In this document: positions 12,291 to 56,230 of the stretch, in pieces
How the letters are laid out: each line of letters begins with the position of its first letter
How positions within the stretch are numbered: the first letter of the stretch is position 1
IMG/VR virus record: IMGVR_UViG_3300028536_000014
Span: 62,001 to 126,000 of that record
Direction: 5' to 3' (one strand)
Length of the DNA stretch: 64,000 bases
The notes under the pieces: generated by a model
The model's database searches: none
What the model saw: the letters and a program-made list of their open reading frames with translations, nothing else
What the model was told of the DNA's origin: nothing
Program-made: the position numbers and the translations under genes

Positions 12291-12566
12291 TCATAATCAC
12301 TTAATCATTAGAAAGAAAATAGGAACAGTTCCGGTTTCCAGGTAAAAACACAAACGTGTCATTTCATACTCCAATCAATAAACCCTTAGACGAGCACACG
12401 ATCACTACGCCTGGTATCACTGGTCCGAATGGGGTTGCAGGGGGGACCCATTCAGCTGAGGCGAAGTTTAACCAAATACCTTCATAATCCATAATTGTAA
12501 CAACGACATCATTAGAATTAGAAGGTTTTCATGAACGTGTGCTCCTCTAAAGATTCACATTAGAAG

Positions 12567-12643
12567 ACCCCTTTCATCATTAACGTCACTGGCACAATGA
12601 GAACTCGTCTCGGGCCAGCCGTCCTTATTTGACGAAAGGGGTC
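12567..12643 (-). repeat. Hairpin element, copy 2, carrying the 21-mer
   Basis: GACCCCTTTC/GAAAGGGGTC stem enclosing CTGGCCCGAGACGAGTTCTCA. Confidence 0.8.
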
Positions 12644-13268
12644 ATGCCACATGCAATATTGGTTTCAACTCCCTTTGAGCGCGATGCTCTCTGCAGAGTT
12701 CCACCATCGAAAGTGTACGAACACTCTCTCTTTCTGCTTTTTCAGCGTGCGGTTAATACACAAGTTAGGACTAGTTGGTTTTGAGTGCCGTAACACTCAC
12801 CTAGGTAGTCCTTGCTGGCTTATGCCAGTAGCCGCGTAACAAACAACACGGGTTTACAAATTATGACCCATATCGTTACGCGGCTATTCGGAGCCTAACG
12901 TCTTCATGTGAGGTATCTCCTCTTGTTGGCAGGTCAAAAGACTTCTCGTAAGAAGCCTGAACATGATGTCGGTGGCGAAAGGTAAGCGGTACCCTCGCAA
13001 CCTGTGACATCACACCTTTCTTACAACGTTTGCCCGAACGAGCTTATGGATTCTCCCCATCTGGCTCGGTGATCTTTCGATCTATTGCCGAAACAGTTCG
13101 GCATAACAACACGGCGGGCAGGTGCTCCTTAACGCCTTTCGGCATACCCTATCTCGAAAGATAGATCAGTCATTCAAGAACAAGAGCGGATCCTTGAATC
13201 AAGACGTAGTGATCGCCGATACCTCGGAGTATCGGTTTAGTTACCGTTAACGTCATACTACCATGCTA

Positions 13269-13360
13269 AGATCAGTGAAGGATGCTATTTCAAGGACGAC
13301 TCCACCGTAATTGGCATCACGGCTTCAAAGTCTCGCATCTATCCTACACATCAAAGATCC
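13269..13360 (-). rRNA. 23S rRNA L1-stalk (H76-H78)-like segment embedded in a phage ncRNA; not a complete rRNA
   Basis: TTGATGTGTAGGATAGATGCGAGACTTTGAAGCCGTGATGCCAATTACGGTGGAGTCGTCCTTGAAATAGCATC: 56 of 74 nt identical to the E. coli sequence as recalled, differences keep pairing. Confidence 0.85.
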
Positions 13361-14150
13361 GTTAAAGTTTCAACAGTACTAAACTAAACCGCGTGAAAGA
13401 AAACACGGGGCGTAACACCGCACCGAAAGAGGGTGAGTATGTTCGTATAGCCCCAGATCATGATCCGCATTCTGTTACCCCAGTCACGTAGGTTAGAGAA
13501 TAACACGAATCACGATTGTTTTCTTTTGTTTAGCGTTCCTGCTAACGATTGCATTGGGTTAGTCCCACGTCCACATTCTGGATGCTCATTTCCAGACTCA
13601 GTTTTCGATGGAGCTTTGGTAACATTCTTTTCGTTGACCTTACCATTTTGATAAGGCTAGAAGTAATAGCGACTTCAAAGAACATGTCTATTGATCAGTG
13701 TATCAAGCACAGACCGTTACGTTGGTCTGTGTTGAATCCCGCTCCAGTTTCCCGGCTACGGCTTCTCCCGTCGATGTTCACTTTTACGAAAAGAATTCAT
13801 TGCTTGGTATAAAGCTTGATGGTAATGGCTTCGCCAGTGTTTATACCACCTGCGCATGGACGATCTCTCCTCCACGACTCACCATTGTTACGAGGCATGC
13901 ATTTGCCCAACACCATTCTGCATTTACCAACCAATACATATATCTGACTTTTTTGATCAGATTAAACGATAATACAAGCACTCCATTAAGCACTCGCGTA
14001 GTGCTCAACAGGCTGCTTCCTCAGACGTAAATAGATCACAAGGTCTACATATCTGAATAGACAACTTGACTAGTCGTGGCCACAACCAATCCGTAGGGTT
14101 TGAATAGTTTCGAATGCCTTCGCTACTACCCCTTCGCAAATCACCCTTAG

Positions 14151-14211
14151 CTGTTATACTTATTTTAATGTTAAAATAAGTTTCGTCCCTTAAAGGACTC
14201 GTCAGTAACAG
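14151..14211 (-). ncRNA. Hammerhead ribozyme (type I)
   Basis: CTGTTA-CTGACGA-GTCC(TTTAAG)GGAC-GAA-ACTTATTTTAA(CA)TTAAAATAAGT-A-TAACAG; predicted cut after GUA, between 14157 and 14156. Confidence 0.9.
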
Positions 14212-14225
14212 TTTTATTCTACAAA

Positions 14226-14301
14226 TGGTGCCCCTGTCTGGTACCGAGCCAGATTCCCTGGCTTACAAAGCCAGACCTCATCCATTAAAGGCTTCAGGGG
14301 C
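14226..14301 (-). tRNA. tRNA-Thr(UGU), atypical T loop
   Basis: GCCCCTG/CAGGGGC acceptor, anticodon loop TTTGTAA, T loop CTCGGTA, CCA. Confidence 0.85.
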
Positions 14302-15012: not shown

Positions 15013-15062
15013 TGGTCCCCGGAGCCGGAATCGAACCGGCACGCCTTACAGCGAGGGATTTT
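15013..15062 (-). pseudogene. 3-prime half (exon 2) of a tRNA-Leu(UAA)-type gene; 5-prime half decayed
   Basis: AAAATCCCTC-variable arm-GCCGGTTCGATTCCGGC-TCCGGGG-A-CCA; upstream exon keeps only AGGGAACTT, with no matching acceptor strand or D arm. Confidence 0.75.
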
Positions 15063-15706
15063 CTTACCACTATAGCTTTCGCTACCATTAAGAAGTATTC
15101 AGCCTTCACTCTTATAGAGTTATTAACTCAGAGCTATTCCTTACTAACTTCTACATGTTTGTGGTCTGGACTGTACCTTAACCTTAGTTCCAACAGAACT
15201 TTTGATGACTCAGCTACACGGTTTCCCGGCTTTTTATCGAAGTTACTTCGCTAGTCAAAGAAATGCTAATTACTAGAATTAGATCATCGCAATGAAAACT
15301 TTAGGTTGTTGCCTACCAGTCTCTACACGTTTTCTTCTCAAGAACAGTCTGTGGAGATCTAATGTTCTATCCCGGTATCATTACTCCCCAACCATTTCTG
15401 GTCACCGGCTCACATCTACCATACGGTAGCTATTGAAGAATTTCGCTCGGTATTAGCATATGAACTGCAACAGACAACTCACTTAGCTTTCACCGACTTT
15501 GACAACATTCACCCTAGCCCTTACCCCGTTGATATTATCTCTGGACGATGATATCTCTATCACCTATTTATAATGGATGCTAGTTTATACGTCTTTCGAT
15601 TGAGTTGTTTCATGAGGGTAGTGAGAGCTTCAACTCACATAAGCTTTTATTCTTCCAACTCTGTTTTACCAACTCATTTTTCGTAGGTGCTCAAATTAAA
15701 GTACTT
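15063..15706 (-). ncRNA. Group I intron, ORF-less (644 nt), in the tRNA-Leu anticodon
   Basis: P1 CTT|AAG with TTTGAG (U.G at the splice site); core motifs AAAGTCGGTGAAAGCT, GCTAATACCGAG, GTAGAGACTG, AAGGTACAGTCC; terminal G. Confidence 0.88.
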
Positions 15707-15738
15707 AAGTTCCCTTTTCTACAAACTACCAACAACAT

Positions 15739-15824
15739 TGGTGCCCAGGGGGGGACTCGAACCCCCAAAAACCACGGGTTTTAAGCCCGCAAAATGTGCC
15801 ATTCTTTATTAGGTTCACCCAGGC
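15739..15824 (-). tRNA. tRNA with UAA anticodon (Leu), enlarged D region and no long variable arm
   Basis: GCCTGGG/CCTGGGC acceptor, GCGGG-CTTAAAA-CCCGT, GGGGG-TTCGAGT-CCCCC, A-CCA. Confidence 0.75.
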
Positions 15825-15833
15825 TAATACAAA

Positions 15834-16697
15834 TCAGAGATAACTGTATTCTAAATCAGCTATCTTTGCAAAACCTTTTCTTCTTACTTGGTGATTAACA
15901 GCATCGTAACTATGACCGGTTTCTTTGATAGCTTCAGTTAAAGAATTATATATCGTTACTAACTTCCTCACGATATCTTTAACACAAACTATTTTGCGAT
16001 ACCCACCAGTTCTATGACCGTTAACAATATTTCCTTCACCAAGCTGTGTCATTTTCTTAAGATCAAGAATTGGCCACGGATTTCCATCAGCATATTTAAA
16101 CGCGTGATAATCAACGTGATAACCAAAGTTAAGACCTTTTCTTAAACATTTAGAAACTGTTGCTGGATGAACTTCAAATCTTTCGGAGAATTCTCTCAAC
16201 GAATACATAAGAAATTCTCTTGGTTCTAAACCAAGATATTTAACTGCGATAGGTTTGTTATCGCTCATAAATCCAGACAATCGTGCATGTTCTACATTCT
16301 CTTTTCCAGTACACCATTCAAGGTTATCTGGAAGATTATGTAGTTGATTTCCATCACAATGATTAACTTCTAAATTACTAAAAGATTTATCTAGATGTCT
16401 AGATGGTCGACCAATGAAAGTTTTTGCTATCAATCGACTAAATTTATGACATACAGGTTTTTTGCCAGGGCTTGTTATAATTACACCTACCGTACCATTA
16501 CCAGAAAGTTGTGGTTTTAACAAGTTACCTGTATGTATGTTTACTATTTTTCCATCTCGACTAACACCAAGTCTTTTGTCATCAGGAAAGTAAAAGAAGT
16601 TATCGAAACCGAGTACCGGTTCAGGATGAACTTCTTCCAAATCAGAAGGATCATTCATCCTTACTACGGCACTCATATCAAGACTCCTGTTGTTCAA
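15834..16697 (-). CDS. Free-standing HNH homing endonuclease (NUMOD4/HNH type)
   Basis: VSRDGKI...LKPQ...RLIAKTFI...VNHCDGNQLHNLPDNLEWCT.KEN..HA. Confidence 0.88.
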   Translation of the reverse strand: MNNRSLDMSAVVRMNDPSDLEEVHPEPVLGFDNFFYFPDDKRLGVSRDGKIVNIHTGNLLKPQLSGNGTVGVIITSPGKKPVCHKFSRLIAKTFIGRPSRHLDKSFSNLEVNHCDGNQLHNLPDNLEWCTGKENVEHARLSGFMSDNKPIAVKYLGLEPREFLMYSLREFSERFEVHPATVSKCLRKGLNFGYHVDYHAFKYADGNPWPILDLKKMTQLGEGNIVNGHRTGGYRKIVCVKDIVRKLVTIYNSLTEAIKETGHSYDAVNHQVRRKGFAKIADLEYSYL

Positions 16698-35654: not shown

Positions 35655-36056
35655 TTAATCTTTCCAGACAACATAACCTGGAACTGGCCAAGAATATGTA
35701 ATCTTTCGATTGTACGGAGGAAGTGCTACTTCACCACGTTTGTGGATGAGAACGACGTCTACTTCGTTTTCAATAAATTGGAAAATACTACGAGCATAAG
35801 AGATATTAGGATATGAATCTGTTGCTCCAAGCCAATCGGCACGAGGGGCCGCCATTGGGTAGTTATCCGGATATTGGGATGGATTGACAATGAAGTCTTT
35901 AGCAACAATGGTCATACCAATTTCATCTAACATCGTAAGATATACACCGGTATCTGTTTCACCCGGATTAATAATACGTGTTACTCTCATTTCTTCCAAC
36001 AATTTTTTGTAATTCTCAGGAGTCTTTTCCATAAATGTTTCCTCTTGTTGTTTCAT
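35655..36056 (-). CDS. Hypothetical protein
   Basis: 133-aa ORF. Confidence 0.55.
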   Translation of the reverse strand: MKQQEETFMEKTPENYKKLLEEMRVTRIINPGETDTGVYLTMLDEIGMTIVAKDFIVNPSQYPDNYPMAAPRADWLGATDSYPNISYARSIFQFIENEVDVVLIHKRGEVALPPYNRKITYSWPVPGYVVWKD

Positions 36057-36086
36057 TAAAAAGATTTATGACGAATATAAAACAAA

Positions 36087-36118
36087 ACGGAGACCTAGGC
36101 CGAAACCTAGGTCTCCGT
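36087..36118 (-). terminator. Intrinsic terminator at the end of the intron-containing RNA
   Basis: acggagacctagg/cctaggtctccgt stem with TTTTGTTTT following on the minus strand. Confidence 0.7.
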
Positions 36119-36119
36119 A

Positions 36120-36593
36120 CTTGCCGTTGCTTAGAACAACATCGAACAAACATCTGACATATACTGATTACGACTAACGACCTATAACCACGAAAACGCA
36201 GATCGTGTCATTACAACCTTTACCAATAGGAGTCAGATATTCAAAACGCAGATCGCGTCGTTTGATCGAGTGTGATGATTTCTATACCAACTCACGGAGG
36301 TATAGCAGAACATTCATCACGATAGTGCCGATATTAACATACGAGTGAAGGATCGTTGATTTAACGCCCCAGTGCTTATATGTATCAATGAGCTAAGTTC
36401 TGTACCTTTCTATCCTACTCTAGTCCTAGTAAATCAAAGACACGGACTCTGGTTTCCCAGCTATCCCTTACCCTCGGAAGTATAACCCAATCTGCGCCTA
36501 TTAAGAGGACCAACAGCTCTAAGGGTTAACGTTTTGAAAGATTAATCAGTAGTTTTCACTACCGTCTAAGATTTTTGTTTCAAGGGAAAACAA
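36120..36593 (-). ncRNA. 3-prime exon of an unidentified large structured RNA
   Basis: ORF-free; hairpins such as GGTAGT-GAAA-ACTACT and CTGG-GAAA-CCAG; repeated CGATCTGCGTTTT. Confidence 0.55.
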
Positions 36594-37408
36594 CTACCAC
36601 TATAGCTTTCGCTACCAATAAAAAGCGTTCAATGTTTCACTCGTATTGAGTTATTAGCTCAACGTGCTATTATTTACTAACTTTACATGTTTGTGGTCTT
36701 GACTCTTTTAAGCATATAGCTCAGCTTCATCTCGCTAGAGGTTCTATTAGTTACTTGCTAGACTTACACTTGGTCTGATTCTTAAAGATTACTTCCGTCT
36801 GTCGGGAAAGATATGACTCTTTACTCCTAAGATTTCATCTATTCAGAAATAAGACTCTTCGCTTCCCGTCATCACTTTCACGCTGTATTAGGCGCTATTT
36901 AGCTTGTTGCCATTGAGTCTCTACACGTTCTAATCCAATTACCTGTTGTGCACATTTACTGTCACAACGCGGGTATAAACACGGTATATACATCACCGCA
37001 CTCGTTTAACCGATCAGTAATTCAGATTCGTTTCGCTCGGTATTAGCGTAGGATGGACCACTCATTCATTGAAGACTTTTTGTGTTCCCTATAGCTATAA
37101 CCGACTTTGACAACATTCACCAACATCTATATTAAGACATGATCGCCATGGAGACTAGGATTTCTCCGGTATTCCATATAGCTATTATCCATATCCTTCA
37201 GCTTGCTGAAATCACATTTCTCAAAGAAGACTGAGGGTCTGCTATTCAGTAGATGTTTATACGTCCTTTCGGATTGAGTTGTTTTCGCATTTTTAGATGG
37301 GGGTTCTCATACTTCCCCGGCAGCTCAGATTTAGGCTGAGTCCCAAACTTTTACCGTGCCGATTTTACCAACTCATTTTTCGTAGGTGCCCTTACATTAC
37401 ACGGTTAA
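36594..37408 (-). ncRNA. Group I intron, ORF-less (815 nt), paralogous to the tRNA-Leu intron
   Basis: Six shared blocks with 15063-15706; P1 TCT|TTA with TAAGGG; P7 GACTC/GAGTC; terminal G. Confidence 0.85.
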
Positions 37409-37820
37409 AGAAGTATTTCTACTCCCCAGTTCCTCAGGAACTGATGTCCTTTCCTCACCGTAAGTTCTTAAACAATGGACACTTTTGGCTGGTCAAAAAT
37501 TCACTTGTTCGTCAGACCATTATGGCATATACCTCACGATCGCCTGCAATTGAGAACAAGTATAGGAGAGTTTACAGTTCAGGAAGACGCAAAAAGGCGT
37601 CTCTCGTAACTGCTACAGAGGGCGAAAGGTCGACCCCAAACTCACAAACTTTAACAAACTAAAAATCTAAGTTTCGTTCGCACGACATAGGTCACCACGA
37701 CAATTGCGATATGTCGACTATTAAGATGATTCAGGCACGAAACACCACCCTTGACACAAGAGAACCAGATCGTGTTACCGGTTACTCCGTCTGAATTTGA
37801 ATTTATCAATAGCTTTCGCT
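37409..37820 (-). ncRNA. 5-prime exon of the unidentified large structured RNA (5-prime boundary uncertain)
   Basis: No minus-strand ORF; hairpins GGAGTA-GAAA-TACTTC, CAGTTCC/GGAACTG, GACGC/GCGTC, CTTGTTC/GAACAAG. Confidence 0.5.
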
Positions 37821-37847
37821 ACATGATGTATTAACTAACTAAATTTT

Positions 37848-38030
37848 CTATTTCATTAAACGGAAGTAAGAATATTCAGCTAGCATAACTGTTACAGCAA
37901 TGAGTGCTCCAGCTGTTATACATTGACCAATTGTTAAGCTTTGCAGCTTAAATAAAATAGCTGAAAGCAAGAAGATGATTACAACACCTTGTTGGTACAT
38001 CATCAGTTTTCCTTCAATCGTTCGATCCAT
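37848..38030 (-). CDS. Small two-TM membrane protein
   Basis: Two hydrophobic helices. Confidence 0.45.
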   Translation of the reverse strand: MDRTIEGKLMMYQQGVVIIFLLSAILFKLQSLTIGQCITAGALIAVTVMLAEYSYFRLMK

Positions 38031-38085
38031 ATTGAATTATTTACTTTATTATGAAGTAAATGTTTACAATAAGTATCGTTCTAAA

Positions 38086-38547
38086 CTACTGAATCGTGCT
38101 GGGATGGAACTCACGCCCCATGATTTTGGCAACTTTTTCCATTACCAAATCCATACTTTTGTTGGCTTTGACAACTTTTGCTTTGATTCGATTGAAATCT
38201 TCCAGCCGATTCTCTTCTTCGAATTTCTTGCGAGTTGCAGGATCAGTGATGAAATAGATACACGGTCCTTTCATCATGGAAGCTTCCATGCCCTTGCTGA
38301 CGATGTGAGAATTCTGGATCATCTTCTTCGTACACAACACCCTGTTCAGAATCGGTAATGCGTATTTTTCGAGACCATTAACAGAATACTCGTAGTCATA
38401 AGCAAACTTTTCGATCTCTTTGAGAGGATCGGCATCGACAGTGATTGTTTTTCCATCCGATAATCCAATTTCAACATTCATAGAGTTTCCTGATTGATAG
38501 AGAAAGAATATAAACCACCTATGCTCAATTAGAGTATATATAACCAA
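38086..38547 (-). CDS. Hypothetical protein (true start probably MNVEIG)
   Basis: ORF; promoter motif overlaps the annotated 5-prime extension. Confidence 0.5.
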   Translation of the reverse strand: MVIYTLIEHRWFIFFLYQSGNSMNVEIGLSDGKTITVDADPLKEIEKFAYDYEYSVNGLEKYALPILNRVLCTKKMIQNSHIVSKGMEASMMKGPCIYFITDPATRKKFEEENRLEDFNRIKAKVVKANKSMDLVMEKVAKIMGREFHPSTIQ

Positions 38548-39333: not shown

Positions 39334-41355
39334 TTACCATTTCTCCAAAACTGCTGGAGCAAAAGCTATTGTGGATTTAAATGTTTCAAATTCAGGGAAA
39401 CATTCCATTGTTACAACATCATCCTCGTCCAATGTCAGAGGCTGACCAATGATCTTCTCTATTTCTACACGACAAAATTCTAAGATGTCTCCAGAACGTG
39501 TAGAAAGATTAGATTCTTCTCCAGTGTCTAAATAAAAGTTATAGATATAAACCTGTGTATCTTGACCAAGTCTATCGACACGACTAATGGCTTGTTCAAA
39601 AATATAGGGTCGAAAAGGCACATTTAACATTAAACAAACGTTAGCCATAATCAAAGGAACAGCAGTTGAAAGACTAGCATAGGTTGCTAATAGAGGATTT
39701 GCATCCTCATCTTTATCAAACTGTTGGATGATACTCGTTAGATTCTTATTGGTTTCACCATAAACGATCAAAGGTTGATAGCCTTCACCTCTGAGATAAT
39801 GTTCTGCTTTTTTAACAGCATTAACATAAGTACTGAATATCAAGACTTTCTTATCTGCTTCATCAATGAAGTCTTGAAGGTTAACATGAGGTACCATATC
39901 AACGATACATTGTTCTCTCATCTTACCTAAAATTCGACCAAGAGCTTCACCATTTATTTTTAACAAAACATATTTAATAACAGTTCTGGCATTCTTGAAA
40001 GGTTCTTTAATGTGCTGTGGAAGTGTTTGAATAATAGTTTTTAATTCAAACTGATTACAAAACTTTGCCATTTCTTTATGAGCAACTGGATCATATCCTT
40101 TCCTAATGATCGAAATATAACTCTTGTAAATATCAAAGTTATGTTTTAATTCTTTTGTTTTAATTGTTTTATCAAAAAGTGAAAGCGATGTATTATAAGT
40201 ATTCTCATACTCTTTCATATGTTTTTGATAAAATTCAATTCGTTCTGCAATAAACGCTTTCAGAACGATCTTTACTTTCGAAAGCGTATAAATATCACCA
40301 TTTGGTATTTTAACTTTGACATCTTTGGAGATAGGTTCTTCACCTTGACGAAATTGAGCTTTAGTTGTCAAATGTATAATCATTCCAACTCGATGACTCA
40401 GAATGTCAACAGCACGACTCGTTGATTTACCAAAAATGTCAGTGAATCGTTGTTGAGCATCATCATTGAAATACGGATCAATAGATCGAAGTAGAGGAAT
40501 AACTTCACGCCCCATCGCTTTGATAGGTGTTCCAGAAGCATAGATTACGTTATTTGAATGAAGTACATCAACTAGTTTCATAAACAACTGAGACCGTTCT
40601 GATGTGGGTTCATTCAAATTATGACTTTCGTCCAACCAGAGCATTGGTTTGAAAAAATGATTCTTCTTAACAAACTCAATGGCATCAATAAGACGTTCAT
40701 AATGGAAAGCATAATTTCGACAATGTTTCGGTGGTTCTTCATCCGAAGAAGAAACCCAATAACTTGTTTTCTTTTTATAAGCTTCTTCAAACGTTTTTTT
40801 CCACACTAAGTCAATTGAGTTCTTAGGAACGATAATGATATTAACATCACTGTCTAAAAGTTCTCCTAGAAACAAAGACATCATTGTCTTACCACTACCA
40901 GGGGCTGCTGCTAAAAGATAACCTTTTAGATGGAATTTCTGAGTACTTTCTTCATAATCGTTAAAGAACTCAGTTTGATGTTCTAATGGATCAAACATAA
41001 ACTTCTTTAACTTATCTCGATCTAAAATAGCAAGAGTAGGTTCAGTAGAAGCAATGAACCATGTATTTTGTTTCAGAAGTTCAATCGTCTTCTGAATGAC
41101 TCTAACATTAACCCCTCTGGGCTTTTGTTCTGCCATTACCGAGAAACTATAAACTAAATCAGGTACAAAAAACTTATTAAACGATAAAGAAGAATGATTG
41201 GTATGAGTAAAAATATTATCACCAATTTTTGATGTTTTCCAAATATTGTAAAATGCATTAATGATAGGAGCTGTAGATATTCCTTCAATATGTACAAGGT
41301 CGTCTTTTTCGTAGACCTTAACTGCCCCCAGCAGACGTCTAAGATAAGACTCCAT
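39334..41355 (-). CDS. SF2 (SNF2/DEAD-like) helicase
   Basis: Q motif PLEHQ, Walker A AAPGSGKT, DESH, SGTP, VLIFS, QAISRVDRLGQ. Confidence 0.88.
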   Translation of the reverse strand: MESYLRRLLGAVKVYEKDDLVHIEGISTAPIINAFYNIWKTSKIGDNIFTHTNHSSLSFNKFFVPDLVYSFSVMAEQKPRGVNVRVIQKTIELLKQNTWFIASTEPTLAILDRDKLKKFMFDPLEHQTEFFNDYEESTQKFHLKGYLLAAAPGSGKTMMSLFLGELLDSDVNIIIVPKNSIDLVWKKTFEEAYKKKTSYWVSSSDEEPPKHCRNYAFHYERLIDAIEFVKKNHFFKPMLWLDESHNLNEPTSERSQLFMKLVDVLHSNNVIYASGTPIKAMGREVIPLLRSIDPYFNDDAQQRFTDIFGKSTSRAVDILSHRVGMIIHLTTKAQFRQGEEPISKDVKVKIPNGDIYTLSKVKIVLKAFIAERIEFYQKHMKEYENTYNTSLSLFDKTIKTKELKHNFDIYKSYISIIRKGYDPVAHKEMAKFCNQFELKTIIQTLPQHIKEPFKNARTVIKYVLLKINGEALGRILGKMREQCIVDMVPHVNLQDFIDEADKKVLIFSTYVNAVKKAEHYLRGEGYQPLIVYGETNKNLTSIIQQFDKDEDANPLLATYASLSTAVPLIMANVCLMLNVPFRPYIFEQAISRVDRLGQDTQVYIYNFYLDTGEESNLSTRSGDILEFCRVEIEKIIGQPLTLDEDDVVTMECFPEFETFKSTIAFAPAVLEKW

Positions 41356-50492: not shown

Positions 50493-50832
50493 CCTTACCT
50501 TCAAGTAGAATCGTTACTTCTACTCCGTGTTGATACACAGCTCTAACTTTCATTAGAAGAGGAGAACATATCACGATCTCTTTCGAGACCCCTTCCATTT
50601 CAGCTCACTTGAGCCTACTCCGCGCTACCGGATGTTCGTTGAACGTTTTTCTGACGGATCAGAAACTTCGCTGCGGATTATCCAATCTTCTTATTTGTTA
50701 CCATACCTGAGTGATTAGTTCAGCCATTGTTATATCACTATAACAACTTGGTATAAGAAGCTCTAAAGGACTTTCCCGACAATTAGAAAGGTGCTATTCA
50801 GATATCACTATCTGAAAGGACTAAAACTGTTA
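50493..50832 (-). ncRNA. Group I intron, ORF-less (340 nt), in the RNAP catalytic motif
   Basis: P1 GAT|TAA with TTAGTC; AATTGTCGGGAAA, AATCCGCAGC, GTTCAACGAACAT/ATGTTC (P7); terminal G. Confidence 0.92.
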
Positions 50833-52071
50833 ATCAGCGTTCATGCTCGTTGTGATCAAAATACTGACTCCAAATGTCAGATCCTTCGGATCGTTTTTAA
50901 CTCTTGGAATATAAACCTTCTGAATGGAACCTTGAAGCAAAGATGGAAATCGATTAAACAAGACTGGATAACGCCCATCTTTAGTATCAGAGATAATTTC
51001 TTTCAGATATTGATCAAGCAGTGGATGATAAATTTCAGTATGAGATAGAAGAAGTCCCACAGCGTCATTAATCAACATTCCACTTTTCTTGATAAGCTTG
51101 TTAATGAGCATCGGTCTGAAAATCGTTAAACCAACACCCCAAGGTATTTCAATTTCATCATATCGATGTGCGTCTGTTATCGAAGAGATAACAGCTCGTG
51201 CGGAATAATCGAATCGAGATCCACCGATATAATGTCGAAAGAGTCCAGACTTCTTAGCAACGATCGTCTTGAAATAACTGTCATAAAACTTACAGCTAAG
51301 AAGATACATCGCTCTAGCTGTACGATTTTCTTTAACAGAAACTGTTTGATTATGAAAATCTTTATCGATCGATACCAACATTTCGATAGCTTCAAGTGCT
51401 AACGGAACGGTACTGTCGATATAAGTGGCCAGAGATGTTTTCTCGATAACCAAGAGAGACTTATTCAGTAAAGGAATATAATCCGAGAACAAAATATCTT
51501 TCTTAACTGTTAAAAGATCAGCAAGATAATCTCGTCCTATTCCTTTGATTTTAAAATCTTTCAGACTCATCAAGAATTCGATGATCGATTGAAAATTCTG
51601 AACGAAGTAATTATATCCACGTTGAATACCAGCTTGTTCAATTTTATCTACGACATCAGGACGATTGATCTGAGGTGAATATGTTGTATCAGTTAACCAT
51701 CTCAAGATGCTAAATTTTGATTTGCTAAATCGATAATCCAACATAATCCAGATTATTGGTGACATCAATTTCTCAACACCAATAGGTTTTCGAAACCAAA
51801 CCAACGGTTCAATGGTGTTTTCAATCGCTGCACTGACGAGTGTGTCGCAGTGTTCACAAATCGTATTCTTACTGAATTCTCCTTTTGTCATTCCACATCG
51901 ACACGAAGGAAGAATTGTCACCATGTCACTTGAATAAGTTGTGGTGATTAATTGTTCAATACGTTCACGATCTTTCGTGGTAGTGTTAAGCAAGTCGTTT
52001 ATGATAATCGGAGGGTTCTTGAGCCCCTCGAACATCATATTGTTATCGATCAAACTCTGGATAATAGGCAC
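50833..52071 (-). CDS. Exon 1 of the non-virion RNA polymerase beta-prime-like subunit (phiKZ gp55-like); spliced product 473 aa
   Basis: Zinc finger CRCG...CEHC, K.GLFR..I.GSR.DYSARAVIS, FNRFPSL, ends SMNAD. Confidence 0.9.
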
Positions 52072-54367: not shown

Positions 54368-56230
54368 TTACCAACGAGCCTGGAAATAAGCTGATGCCGC
54401 AGCCGGTGTTGAACCATAACCACCCTGACGCATGTAGCTCTGACCAGTACCCAGCAATGCCTGCTGAGCATAAGTTGCCACACCACGTGCGTTGTAGAAG
54501 TCGTTGCCAGACATCGGTGTCCGGATATTGACCTGTAGGTTCTGAGTAGCGATAGCCGCGTCAAGCGCCGATAAGAAAGCACCAGTAAAAGTCACACGCT
54601 GATAGTAGCCCGTAAACTTCGCGGTATCGTTAGAAAGTTGCATAAGCATCTTCCGACGCGCTTCCAGTCGCAGATTCTCCGGATATTCCAAACGCAGGAA
54701 GGTATCAGACCATTCACGAATCATGGCCGGATTGCGTTGTCCGACGATATTCGCTACAGCAGCGTAGTCGAAATCACGCAGGTCACGCTTGTTGCCCTGG
54801 TTGTCTACCCAAGTACCAGCATGGATACGTTCCGATTGTGTTGCGAACAACGGAGTACCCATTTGGAAATGCTTGGCGTACTCACCATTGGTCAGTTCAT
54901 TGGCAGACTGGATGATGCGCTTGTAAGCACCATCGACGCCACGGGCCGCAGCCATGAAGACACTGAGATAATGGGTCTGCGGACCATACTCTGGAATATC
55001 CATCGAAATCATGAGATCGCTATTGAACAGAGCGGCAATATACATGCCGAGCTGTTCTGATTTGAAATCGTCAGACTTGGTGTCGATTGGCAAACCAAAC
55101 CCGCTTGTGTTGGTTGCCAGAATACCGCTAGGTTGCGGTACTGGCAAATTGCCTTCGTAGTTGTAGGCGCCAGGATCTGTGATGTCAAGCTCCTTCTTGG
55201 AGACAGCCATCGGACGAAACGCTTGGATCCAGTTTGACGATGGACGTAGTGCCAGTGCCGTCGAGAGTGCCAGCAGAACCGATGCTGTTGTTTGAGCAAC
55301 GTTGGCGGTAATGTCGGTGATCACTTGACGAGCGACAAATTTCCGAGTTTGAGCCATCTGCTGAGGCGCAAATGCCTGACCAAGTCCGCCGTTCGGATCT
55401 TGTGCAGGAAACCAGACCGCATCCACGAAACTGGAAAGAGTGGAGAAGTTCGCATTACGATCGCCAGTGTTCATCTGACGACTATCGCGATCTACGACCT
55501 TACGATCGGAGAAATTGATAAGCACGTCACTACGATAGACATTGCCAGCTGCATCTTCGAGTGTCTGACGAGCAAATGTCACATCGACCTGAGCCTGACC
55601 ACGCTTGTTCAGATTGGCGAGGTTGAGATCTTTGAAACCAGGTGTCCGAGAATTGAGTTCGGTAACACCAGCCATTGCAGCAGTCAGAGCCAGACGATGA
55701 ACCTGGGTCTTGTTAACTGGATTGAAGTTGCTATTGACGACTGTGCCGTCAACGAAGAGCACCTTGTTTGTGTTGTAAGCGGTCTCGATAATCCGCCGAG
55801 CTTTGCGAACCAGAATGTCGTTGATCGCATCGGACGGAACGCGATAGATCATTACGGTACGATCGTAGATCTGGTCCGAATACGGTTGGATTTCTTCACC
55901 GGTTTCGGCGAGAAGGATGATGTAAACAGCGACACCCAGTTCCGGCATGTTCTGCAATCGCGTGGCCACGAGAATGCAAGAGAAGTCGAGCGCTGGATCG
56001 GTTGCCCGACTCAATTCGACCACACCGATATCGACACTGCGGTCAGCGAGCTTGTAAATCTCGATCAGAGCCGTCTTGACACTATTGTAATACTCCGAAC
56101 CCATTCCACGCGGAATCGGGGCATTGAAGAGACCACCGTCATGCATGTTCCAACCGTTCTGACCTGCGGATGCGGCTGCTGCACGCGGATCACCATTGCT
56201 TGCACCACTACCTTCGTTAACAATACTCAC
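54368..56230 (-). CDS. chmA: Chimallin, phage nuclear shell protein
   Basis: 620 aa; GN..RSD, VITD, IDTKSDDF..EQLG, GTW.D..G.KRDLRDFD, TG..QRVTF...F..ALD resemble recalled 201phi2-1 gp105; sits upstream of the gp55-like RNAP subunit as in phiKZ. Confidence 0.88.
   Translation of the reverse strand: MSIVNEGSGASNGDPRAAAASAGQNGWNMHDGGLFNAPIPRGMGSEYYNSVKTALIEIYKLADRSVDIGVVELSRATDPALDFSCILVATRLQNMPELGVAVYIILLAETGEEIQPYSDQIYDRTVMIYRVPSDAINDILVRKARRIIETAYNTNKVLFVDGTVVNSNFNPVNKTQVHRLALTAAMAGVTELNSRTPGFKDLNLANLNKRGQAQVDVTFARQTLEDAAGNVYRSDVLINFSDRKVVDRDSRQMNTGDRNANFSTLSSFVDAVWFPAQDPNGGLGQAFAPQQMAQTRKFVARQVITDITANVAQTTASVLLALSTALALRPSSNWIQAFRPMAVSKKELDITDPGAYNYEGNLPVPQPSGILATNTSGFGLPIDTKSDDFKSEQLGMYIAALFNSDLMISMDIPEYGPQTHYLSVFMAAARGVDGAYKRIIQSANELTNGEYAKHFQMGTPLFATQSERIHAGTWVDNQGNKRDLRDFDYAAVANIVGQRNPAMIREWSDTFLRLEYPENLRLEARRKMLMQLSNDTAKFTGYYQRVTFTGAFLSALDAAIATQNLQVNIRTPMSGNDFYNARGVATYAQQALLGTGQSYMRQGGYGSTPAAASAYFQARW

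What the first reader, a model, noticed from the sequence alone, without database searches (positions are those of the whole stretch)
36120..37820. Group I intron inserted into an unidentified large non-coding RNA
Seen: an 815-nt ORF-less intron (36594-37408) with intact P1 (U.G splice pair), P10, P7 and terminal G. Its flanks are neither an ORF nor a tRNA nor recognisable rRNA. They are ~410 and ~470 nt of hairpin-rich sequence ending at a strong terminator. Known: bacterial and phage group I introns sit in tRNA, rRNA, tmRNA or conserved protein genes, and retention of splicing usually marks an important host gene. Inference: the spliced ~0.9 kb RNA is a functional ncRNA, of a size similar to GOLLD.
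Basis: partly seen in the sequence, partly recalled or inferred. Interest (0 to 1): 0.85.

Follow-up and report, generated by a model that had tools for sequence, protein, structure and literature searches.

The report
Stray tRNA-type intron in untranslated phage RNA
The 815-base self-splicing (group I) intron is real, but it is a displaced copy of this giant phage's own tRNA-Leu intron, and the non-coding RNA around it shows no sign of being a conserved RNA gene.

Summary
Rfam does not detect it. It has a 644-nt paralog at 15063-15706, which Rfam scores at 43 bits. That paralog sits at the classical CUU|...G|AAAA site of a tRNA-Leu(UAA)-like gene.

A covariance model built from 41 metagenomic tRNA introns, none from this window, hits both copies. 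The guide sequence of copy B (UAAGGG) pairs with its own 5' exon (UCU, U.G kept) and 3' exon (UUG). Copy A uses UUUGAG with CUU and AAA, so P1 and P10 covary.

The 439-nt and 475-nt flanks have stops in all frames and match no Rfam family, tRNA, tmRNA or pseudogene trace. I found no homolog in any collection searched. Their folding z-scores are only about -1.5.

The flanks carry apparent relics of a tRNA-Leu anticodon arm and of the intron's P9 hairpin. They lie in a lineage-specific block of orphan genes. Copy B departs from the family at 3 of 57 invariant core positions; copy A departs at none. Copy A's own host tRNA lacks a canonical 5' half, so an intact intron does not mark an important host gene here.

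Most likely this is an ectopic selfish intron in an untranslated transcript tail. A new functional ncRNA host is not excluded (about 0.2).

The parts
36594..37408 (-). Group I intron, copy B (815 nt, no ORF), of the tRNA-type family. Core elements P1-P9 are present. Peripheral insertions are large compared with the family median of 213 nt.
   Evidence: Block homology to copy A. Family model R1 hits at 36583-36794 and 36892-37148. 53 of 57 family-invariant columns are kept. Longest stop-free run is 59 codons.
37406..37411 (-). P1 target strand UCU|UUA. The 5' splice site lies after U37409 (the U.G wobble).
   Evidence: Read from the sequence. By homology to A's CUU|AAG and to the family's ACUU|A...AUUUGAG.
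37389..37394 (-). Internal guide sequence UAAGGG. GGG pairs with the 5' exon UCU (P1). UAA pairs with the intron start UUA and then with the 3' exon UUG (P10).
   Evidence: Sequence. It occupies the same position as A's UUUGAG (15695-15690), directly before the shared CACCUACG. Relative to A, three P1 pairs changed on both sides, the splice-site U.G is kept, and the P10 pairs changed too.
37363..37389 (-). 27-nt block GCACCUACGAAAAAUGAGUUGGUAAAA, identical in A and B. It opens a P2-region extension that is absent from ordinary family members.
   Evidence: 100% over 27 nt between 37363-37389 and 15664-15690. No similar block in 120 family loci at up to 6 mismatches. No other real occurrence in IMG/VR or GTDB genomes.
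36892..37148 (-). Catalytic core P3-P4-P5-P6-P7(5')-P3'. J4/5 reads UAUA where the family has GAAn (37099 G>U, 37097 A>U), and 37048 is T>C.
   Evidence: R1 hit of 28.5 bits, E 1.7e-6. Comparison at invariant columns.
36583..36794 (-). P8(3')-J8/7-P7(3')-P9.0-P9-omegaG. Includes GAGUCA (36705-36700), ACCAC with GUGGU (36600-36596), the P9 GAAA hairpin (36615-36602) and G36594.
   Evidence: R1 hit of 35.7 bits. The outer P7 pair is G.A (A36700), where 41 of 41 family members and copy A have G-C.
37409..37847 (-). 5' flank ('exon 1', 439 nt), untranslated, following a 60-aa predicted membrane ORF (38030-37848).
   Evidence: Stops in all frames. No Rfam hit. No Pfam or PHROG hit on its ORF fragments. 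z-score -1.59. No hit in family loci.
37801..37822 (-). P9-like hairpin module 1: GUAGCGAAAGCUAU-UGAUAAAU. Possibly the last trace of a third, deleted intron copy.
   Evidence: Exact 14-mer shared with the P9 of A and B (3 matches against 0.04 expected). Weak R1 hit at 37789-37925, 13.6 bits. No wider similarity.
36119..36593 (-). 3' flank ('exon 2', 475 nt), untranslated. It starts with a UUGUUUU...AAACAAA hairpin.
   Evidence: z-score -1.52. Also.
36541..36562 (-). P9-like hairpin module 2: GUAGUGAAAACUAC-UGAUUAAU. The stem keeps pairing through changes relative to module 1.
   Evidence: Local alignment to module 1. R1 partial hit at 36549-36570, 7.4 bits. The degenerate pattern occurs only at these two places in IMG/VR.
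36199..36258 (-). Two copies of ACRCGAUCUG(CGUUUU), 50 nt apart. A third copy lies at 37775-37766 in the 5' flank.
   Evidence: 3 matches in the window, all in this region, against 0.15 expected. Family D2.
36087..36118 (-). Intrinsic terminator that closes the untranslated stretch.
   Evidence: 14-bp stem, 8 G-C pairs, tetraloop, UUUUGUUUU tail.
15063..15706 (-). Group I intron, copy A (644 nt, no ORF): the paralog that identifies B.
   Evidence: Rfam RF00028 at 43.3 bits. R1 at 64.5 and 35.3 bits. 57 of 57 invariant columns kept.
15013..15062 (-). 3' exon of copy A: the 3' half of a class-II tRNA-Leu(UAA). It reads AAAA, UCCCU, a variable arm, the T arm, UCCGGGG, A, CCA.
   Evidence: Sequence. 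84-86% identical to the 3' exons of intron-containing tRNA-Leu genes in L117 and L034.

Best explanation
Copy B is an ectopic paralog of the phage's tRNA-Leu(UAA) group I intron. It lies in a lineage-specific, untranslated tail of a minus-strand transcript, not in a conserved RNA gene.

Shown:
- It belongs to the widespread family of group I introns that interrupt tRNA anticodon loops.
- All core helices are present.
- Its guide sequence UAAGGG is complementary to both of its present exons.

Inferred mechanism:
- Transcription runs from upstream of the 60-aa ORF (or from a start near 37.85 kb) to the terminator at 36087-36118.
- The intron folds and binds free guanosine, which attacks after U37409.
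- G36594 then enters the same site, and the exons are joined as ...ACUUCU-UUGUUUUCCC....
- This releases an 815-nt intron and a ~0.9-kb untranslated RNA.

Inferred history: the copy arose by duplication or reverse-splicing-type transposition from a tRNA-Leu context and brought short exon remnants with it. Its guide was then matched to the local sequence. The flanks are non-conserved filler that also holds P9-hairpin relics. The intron persists as a selfish element, probably with weakened activity because of three core substitutions.
For: Family membership:
- A/B block homology.
- Rfam hit on A.
- The 21-mer at the 3' end of A and B occurs in at least 120 metagenomic loci. ARAGORN intron-containing tRNAs there, mostly tRNA-Leu(UAA).
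- The independent model R1 hits A and B.

Splice sites: P1 and P10 pair in B, and both covary against A. The family consensus is ACUU|A..AUUUGAG ... GGUAAG|AAAAUCC.

tRNA-derived context: both 5' exons share GUAGAAA..CUU, both 3' exons share UCCCUYG, and both have an RGGGA/UCCCU helix.

No host gene detected:
- No Rfam, tRNA or tmRNA match.
- No protein traces.
- No homologs.
- The block is lineage-specific.
- Weak folding z-scores.

Other support:
- Relaxed core: 53 of 57 invariant columns kept in B against 57 of 57 in A; one of the four departures is an alignment shift at the terminal G.
- Intron relics in the flanks.
- Precedent that host integrity is not required here: A's tRNA is not recognised after in-silico splicing.
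Against: - A 1.7-kb stretch without genes is costly in a phage genome. Yet it is kept, and it is identical in two samples.
- The guide matches both exons, which is what selection for accurate exon ligation would produce.
- The flanks have slightly raised G+C (0.41 against 0.376 for the window) and several GNRA hairpins.
- The same phage holds another long ORF-poor stretch with ribozyme-like and rRNA-like elements, so large ncRNAs may be part of its biology.
- The absence of homologs is weak evidence. The nearest known relative has only 61% identity in the helicase, and public collections could be searched only with exact patterns.
Confidence: 0.5

Rival explanations
1. The flanks are the two halves of a new functional ncRNA of about 0.9 kb, and the intron is kept splicing-competent because the ligated RNA matters to the phage.
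For: - A long ORF-free stretch bounded by a strong terminator.
- A guide sequence complementary to both exons, covarying against copy A.
- GNRA hairpins and mildly raised G+C.
- Repeated motifs confined to the region: ACRCGAUCUG three times and a ~35-nt hairpin module twice.
- The phage has other candidate large RNAs.
Against: - No Rfam match at E<=10.
- No homolog anywhere searched.
- z-scores of only -1.5 to -1.6.
- The insertion site looks like a tRNA relic rather than a conserved functional site.
- Three core substitutions in B.
- Copy A shows that intact introns persist here in a defective host gene.
Confidence: 0.2
2. Copy B is a dead relic. It no longer splices, and the whole 1.7 kb is decaying mobile-element debris: one near-complete intron plus fragments.
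For: - The J4/5 A>U change, a T>C change near J5/4, and loss of the outer P7 G-C pair. These three positions are invariant in 41 family members.
- The Rfam model fails on B.
- P9-like fragments at 37822-37801 and 36562-36541, and a 13.6-bit partial hit at 37789-37925.
Against: - 53 of 57 invariant columns, every helix, the pair taken to bind guanosine, the terminal G and a guide that fits both exons are all retained.
- Peripheral helices differ from A by compensatory changes: 14 of 88 predicted pairs. This implies that folding was selected after the copies diverged.
Confidence: 0.2
3. The intron RNAs are the selected products. A and B are unusually long, ORF-less versions with shared extra domains, and they may have been recruited as structured RNAs. 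The exons would then be irrelevant apart from allowing release.
For: - A (644 nt) and B (815 nt) compare with a family median of 213 nt. Seven of the eight family members of 600 nt or more have a stop-free stretch of 123-220 codons; A and B have none above 63 codons.
- The A/B-specific blocks, including 27 identical nt, are as conserved as the catalytic core, while the sequence between them has diverged with indels.
- Relatives without tRNA exons exist in phage-like metagenomic contigs (L081, L144).
Against: - With only two copies in one genome, gene conversion could explain the identical blocks.
- The extra domains may simply stabilise the fold.
- No further members with these blocks were found.
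Confidence: 0.1

Closest known systems
[quoted passage not shown] I recall these as subgroup IC3; the subgroup was not tested here.
   Same: - Core sequence blocks: GUCAAAkUCGGUGAA, GCUAAUACCGAGC, GUGUAGAGACU, AUAGUCCAGACCAC and GUAGCGAAAGCUAUAGUGGUA.
- P1 with a U.G wobble, and a terminal G.
- Copy A sits exactly at CUU|AAAA of a tRNA-Leu(UAA) 3' half.
- B is detected by a model built only from such introns.
   Different: - B is not in a tRNA.
- Its guide is retargeted to UCU|UUG.
- Both copies are 3-4 times the median length, have no ORF, and carry extra conserved domains.
- B has three changes at invariant positions.
Phage group I introns in protein-coding genes (T4 td/nrdB/sunY, SPO1 and Twort introns). 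This window has one such intron at 50541-50852.
   Same: Self-splicing introns carried by large virulent phages. The 50.5-kb intron in this window interrupts an RNA polymerase beta'-like gene.
   Different: - A and B share none of that intron's sequence.
- They belong to the tRNA-type family.
- They interrupt no reading frame and encode no homing endonuclease. An HNH-like ORF lies beside A, at 15834-16697.
Large phage-associated ncRNAs GOLLD and ROOL
   Same: Size range, and location in a phage genome that also encodes tRNAs.
   Different: No match to either Rfam model, or to any other, at E<=10. No multi-genome conservation found.
Family members without tRNA exons in metagenomic, phage-like contigs (L081 and L144)
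   Same: They share the P4-P6 blocks (UCGGUGAAAGCUAAG, AUGCUAAUACCGAG), P7 and the P9 21-mer. L144 also shares the AAACAUGUAAGU extension. Both lie between ORFs rather than in tRNAs.
   Different: They show no obvious P1 and no G directly after GUGGUA(A), whereas B has both. Their flanks are unrelated to B's.

Membership tests
Group I intron (Rfam RF00028) | Match to the Rfam covariance model at or above the gathering score | tested here: not met
   B: no hit even at E<=10 in 2.4-kb and 0.63-kb searches. A: 43.3 bits, below the gathering score of 50. The model's seed contains no bacterial tRNA introns according to Williams 2020, and B has long insertions.
Group I intron | Conserved core P3-P8 and P7/P9 recognised by an independent family model | tested here: met
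   Model R1 (41 metagenomic tRNA introns). B: 35.7 bits (E 4e-8) and 28.5 bits (E 1.7e-6). A: 64.5 and 35.3 bits.
Group I intron | P1 helix with a U.G wobble at the 5' splice site, formed by an internal guide sequence | tested here: met
   B pairs UCU|UUA with UAAGGG. A pairs CUU|AAG with UUUGAG. The U.G is kept and three pairs changed on both sides.
Group I intron | Terminal G (omegaG), and P10 between the guide and the 3' exon | tested here: met
   G36594. The 3' exon UUG pairs with the guide's UAA. In A, AAA pairs with UUU.
Group I intron | P7 with a bulged A and a G-C pair that binds guanosine | tested here: met
   The pair G36919-C36701 is kept. I take it to bind guanosine by analogy with Tetrahymena G264-C311, from memory. 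The neighbouring outer pair is G.A in B, against G-C in 41 of 41 family members.
Group I intron | J4/5 adenosines that, from memory of Tetrahymena and Azoarcus studies, dock the splice-site wobble pair | tested here: inconclusive
   The family has GAA with both A's invariant. B has UAU(A), so one invariant A is replaced. The effect on activity is unknown.
Group I intron | Guanosine-dependent self-splicing | not testable with these tools
   Needs in vitro transcription and a splicing assay, or RNA-seq.
tRNA-interrupting group I introns (bacterial tRNA type) | Insertion in the anticodon loop of a tRNA gene | tested here: not met
   B: ARAGORN finds no tRNA or tmRNA in the joined exons, and Rfam finds no tRNA in the flanks. 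A: the 3' half is canonical, but the 5' half is not recognised.
GOLLD / ROOL / other Rfam large ncRNAs, RNase P, tmRNA | Match of the flanks to the family covariance model | tested here: not met
   No match at the gathering score in the window, and none at E<=10 in 35800-38200. The exons could only be scanned as they lie in the genome, not joined.

The most novel reading that the evidence does not exclude
The two flanks are the halves of a previously unknown ~0.9-kb non-coding RNA of a nucleus-forming giant phage. It would be matured by self-splicing of a retargeted tRNA-type intron. To my knowledge this would be the first group I intron in an RNA gene other than tRNA, rRNA or tmRNA.
Probability: 0.17. 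Interest if true: 0.8.

Novelty: new variant of a known kind. Interest (0 to 1): 0.45.

Why it matters
If the picture is right, tRNA-type group I introns can leave tRNA genes, re-aim their guide sequence and survive in untranslated phage RNA. That is a natural example of intron transposition to a new site. It also warns against inferring an important host gene from an intact intron.

The two long, ORF-less copies with shared extra domains are candidates for structural study of how peripheral domains are added to a small ribozyme core.

The phage encodes a chimallin homolog, and it carries three group I introns, a hammerhead-like motif and an rRNA L1-stalk look-alike within 64 kb. That makes it a good system for studying RNA processing in a nucleus-forming phage.

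Tried and rejected
- Recoded or broken protein gene: rejected. All three stop codons are abundant in all frames. ORF fragments have no significant Pfam or PHROG hit. tblastn of all window, L005 and L006 ORFs against the region gives only noise or A/B nucleotide homology.
- Protein gene split by the region (60-aa ORF plus 133-aa ORF): no support. The only homolog of the 133-aa protein is a complete 139-aa protein.
- Group II intron, RNase P, tmRNA, GOLLD, ROOL: no Rfam hits.
- A third full intron copy upstream of 37809: local alignment scores no better than shuffles. Only a 14-nt hairpin and a 13.6-bit partial hit remain.
- The two flanks as duplicates of each other: global alignment z = -0.06.
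- Exact-pattern scans for A/B-specific blocks returned chance hits in coding genes: a tail-fibre-like gene (L003), terminase genes (L026-L028) and an efflux pump (L149).
- The nearest relative, L005, was first taken as syntenic. blastp showed that only the helicase and two upstream genes are collinear, so its repeat array is not the counterpart of this region.
- Population variation: a second assembly of the same phage is 100% identical over 8.4 kb, so no SNPs are available.
- A shuffle-based z-score for the whole joined-exon RNA timed out. Only the two flanks were scored separately.
- A family-wide count of P1 and P7 pairs with the count of structure pairs failed on a mistyped structure string. 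P7 was counted by script instead.
Full report
**What the window is.** The window is part of IMG/VR contig IMGVR_UViG_3300028536_000014, 244.7 kb. An identical 244.8-kb contig was assembled from a second JGI sample. Almost all genes lie on the minus strand. The SNF2-type helicase at 39334-41355 is 38-46% identical to those of phiKZ-like giant phages. The window also encodes a chimallin homolog (54368-56230) and a split RNA polymerase beta'-like gene. This is therefore a distant, low-G+C (37.6%) relative of the nucleus-forming jumbo phages. The closest helicase in 5.8 billion proteins is only 61% identical.

**Checking the observation.**
- Positions 36057-37847 contain 28-55 stop codons in each of the six frames. 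TAA, TAG and TGA are all present in every frame, so the stretch is not a gene read in another code.
- It follows a 60-aa hydrophobic ORF. It ends at a strong minus-strand terminator at 36118-36087.
- Rfam finds nothing in it, even at E<=10.
- MFE z-scores are unremarkable: -0.23 for the proposed intron, and -1.59 and -1.52 for the flanks.

On this evidence alone the intron claim would be unproven.

**The paralog.** A 13-nt hairpin sequence from the proposed intron's 3' end recurs at 15072-15084. Aligning the surroundings shows that 36594-37408 and about 15063-15706 are homologous. Blocks of 10-27 identical bases are separated by diverged segments with insertions and deletions.

The 15-kb copy (A) matches Rfam Intron_gpI over the full model at 43.3 bits, below the gathering score of 50. 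Its ends are the classical ones for the tRNA-Leu(UAA) intron described as CUU/a...g/AAAA:
- The 5' exon is ...AGGGAACUU | AAGUAC.... P1 pairs CUU|AAG with UUUGAG.
- The intron ends ...GUGGUAAG.
- The 3' exon is AAAAUCCCU, followed by a long variable arm, a T arm, the acceptor strand UCCGGGG, A and CCA.

**The family.** The 21-mer GTAGCGAAAGCTATAGTGGTA, shared by A and B, occurs exactly in at least 120 metagenomic loci from many habitats.
- In almost all of them a tRNA 3' half follows within two or three bases.
- ARAGORN intron-containing tRNAs. Most are tRNA-Leu(UAA). Arg, Met, Thr, Glu, Ser and others also occur. The median intron length is 213 nt.
- An alignment of 41 of these introns gives a clear consensus.
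- A covariance model built from that alignment, with no window sequence in it, finds A at 64.5 and 35.3 bits.
- It finds B at 35.7 bits (36583-36794, E 4e-8) and 28.5 bits (36892-37148, E 1.7e-6).

B is therefore a member of the tRNA-type group I intron family by a test that is independent of A.

**Splice sites of B.** By position, B's guide sequence is UAAGGG (37394-37389). It lies directly before the shared CACCUACG, where A has UUUGAG.
- Its GGG pairs with the 5' exon UCU (37411-37409). The splice-site U.G falls at the same place as in A and in the family.
- Its UAA pairs first with the intron's UUA and then with the 3' exon UUG (36593-36591), forming P10.
- Relative to A, three P1 pairs changed on both sides and the P10 pairs changed too, while the wobble pair stayed.
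- The terminal G is 36594.
- P7 (GAGACUC with GAGUCA) shows the family's bulged A. It keeps the G-C pair that I take to bind guanosine, by analogy with Tetrahymena. The innermost pair is C-G in B and G-C in A, where the family has mostly A-U.

Across the whole A/B alignment, 14 of 88 predicted pairs are kept through changes on both sides.

**Is B intact?** Against the 57 columns that are invariant in the 41 family members, A matches 57 and B matches 53. One of B's four departures is an alignment shift at the terminal G. The three real departures are:
- the second invariant A of J4/5 (37097, now U);
- a T>C change at 37048;
- the outer P7 pair, which is G.A because 36700 is A.

From what I recall of other group I introns, J4/5 adenosines dock the wobble pair and this P7 pair lies next to the guanosine pocket. 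Lower activity is plausible, but it was not tested.

Both A and B are also unusual for their length without an ORF. The longest stop-free runs are 63 and 59 codons. Seven of the eight family members of 600 nt or more contain stop-free stretches of 123-220 codons. The extra length includes blocks specific to A and B, such as 27 identical bases after the guide. I found these blocks nowhere else.

**What the flanks are.** The joined exons have no frame longer than 55 codons, and ARAGORN finds no tRNA or tmRNA in them. Further negative results:
- Their ORF fragments have no significant Pfam or PHROG hit.
- No ORF of this phage or its relatives leaves a tblastn trace there.
- There is no similarity in GenBank phages at megablast or blastn sensitivity, or in the 120 family loci. 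An exact scan of IMG/VR for the flank hairpin module finds it only in this contig.
- The two flanks are not duplicates of each other.

They do contain intron-like debris. A P9-type hairpin module, GUAGYGAAARCUAY-UGAUWAAU, sits at the very start of the 5' flank (37822-37801). It occurs again 30 nt into the 3' flank (36562-36541), with its stem kept through changed bases. There is a weak partial model hit at 37789-37925. A decamer, ACRCGAUCUG, occurs three times, and only in this region.

Next to the splice sites, B's exons resemble A's: 5' GUAGAAA..CUU, 3' UCCCUYG, and a possible GGGGA/UCCCU helix like A's AGGGA/UCCCU anticodon stem. I read these as leftovers of a tRNA-Leu gene. This is an inference from short matches.

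**Genomic context.**
- Only the helicase and two upstream genes are collinear with the nearest relative, L005. The block 34.9-39.3 kb, made of orphan ORFs plus this region, is lineage-specific.
- The only homolog of the downstream 133-aa gene (49% identical) has ORFs packed directly upstream of it.
- The second assembly of the phage is identical, so there is no population variation to examine.

A is perfect at all invariant positions, yet its host is not a normal tRNA.
- After in-silico splicing, ARAGORN does not recognise a tRNA, even at lowered thresholds.
- The anticodon loop would have eight bases (ACUUAAAA).
- The D-arm region is disrupted when compared with family 5' halves.
- The only sequence able to pair with the acceptor strand UCCGGGG is CCCUGGG, which overlaps the 3' end of the preceding, intronless tRNA-Leu(UAA).

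An HNH-like ORF lies just upstream. In this genome, then, an intact intron does not imply an intact host gene.

**Conclusion.** The most economical reading is an ectopic, probably still splicing but slightly degraded, selfish copy of the tRNA-Leu intron, sitting in a non-conserved untranslated transcript tail (confidence about 0.5).

Three alternatives remain:
- A functional ~0.9-kb host RNA is possible (about 0.2). Arguments for it are that 1.7 kb of non-coding DNA is retained, that the guide fits both exons, and that motifs are confined to the region.
- A dead relic (about 0.2).
- Intron RNAs recruited for their own function (about 0.1).

Splicing assays and a covariance search of full metagenomes for the flanks would decide between them.

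Noticed in passing
window 15013-15824 (-): An intronless, atypical tRNA-Leu(UAA) at 15742-15824 (Rfam 32.6 bits, odd D arm) is followed 32 nt later by intron A. Intron A sits in a second tRNA-Leu(UAA) whose 3' half is canonical but whose 5' half is not. That second tRNA has an eight-base anticodon loop and a disrupted D arm. Its only acceptor partner, CCCUGGG, overlaps the first tRNA's 3' end.
   Followed up: partly
window 15834-16697 (-): A 287-aa ORF with weak HNH endonuclease similarity (PF13392, E 3e-4) lies directly upstream of the tRNA-Leu/intron A locus. It may be a free-standing homing endonuclease.
   Followed up: no
window 14152-14226 (-): A hammerhead-like motif lies immediately downstream of tRNA-Thr, at the start of a ~1.9-kb ORF-poor stretch. 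It scores 34.8 bits against RAGATH-1 hammerhead (E 0.005) and 23.4 bits against Hammerhead_1. Both are below the gathering scores.
   Followed up: no
window 13270-13359 (-), within 12291-14225: A 90-nt element matches bacterial 23S rRNA positions 2126-2215 at 63.6 bits, above the gathering score. I recall this rRNA region as the L1 stalk (helices 76-78). It sits inside a 1.9-kb ORF-poor stretch of 44.5% G+C between tRNA-Thr and tRNA-Gln. It may be an rRNA mimic or part of another large RNA.
   Followed up: no
window 50541-50852 (-): A third, unrelated group I intron (Rfam 59.5 bits) directly follows an ORF with an RNA polymerase Rpb1 domain 2 match (50830-52071). It apparently splits a phage RNA polymerase beta'-like gene.
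   Followed up: partly
window 54368-56230 (-): A chimallin (phage nucleus shell) homolog (PF25677, E 1.7e-24). The phage is probably nucleus-forming.
   Followed up: no
L005 4900-6300 (+): The nearest relative (helicase 61% identical) has a ~1.4-kb ORF-less array of about 30 units with a 36-nt period. Each unit reads AACCC, 11 variable nt, AUGUAUY, then about 12 variable nt. The array ends at a terminator. Its nature is unknown: binding-site array, iterons or promoters. It is not collinear with the window's region.
   Followed up: partly
L081 3830-4440 (+); L144 reverse strand, about 540-1005 of the reverse-complemented locus: Members of the same intron family lie between ORFs in AT-rich phage-like contigs, with no tRNA exons, no evident P1 and no G after GUGGUA(A). 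L081 has a tandem duplication of the P3-P6 part. They may be free-standing group I-derived RNAs or relics.
   Followed up: partly
L029-L148 (metagenomic loci): The 21-mer GTAGCGAAAGCTATAGTGGTA is invariant at the 3' end of tRNA introns from marine, freshwater, soil and gut metagenomes. It is a handy exact probe for this intron family.
   Followed up: yes
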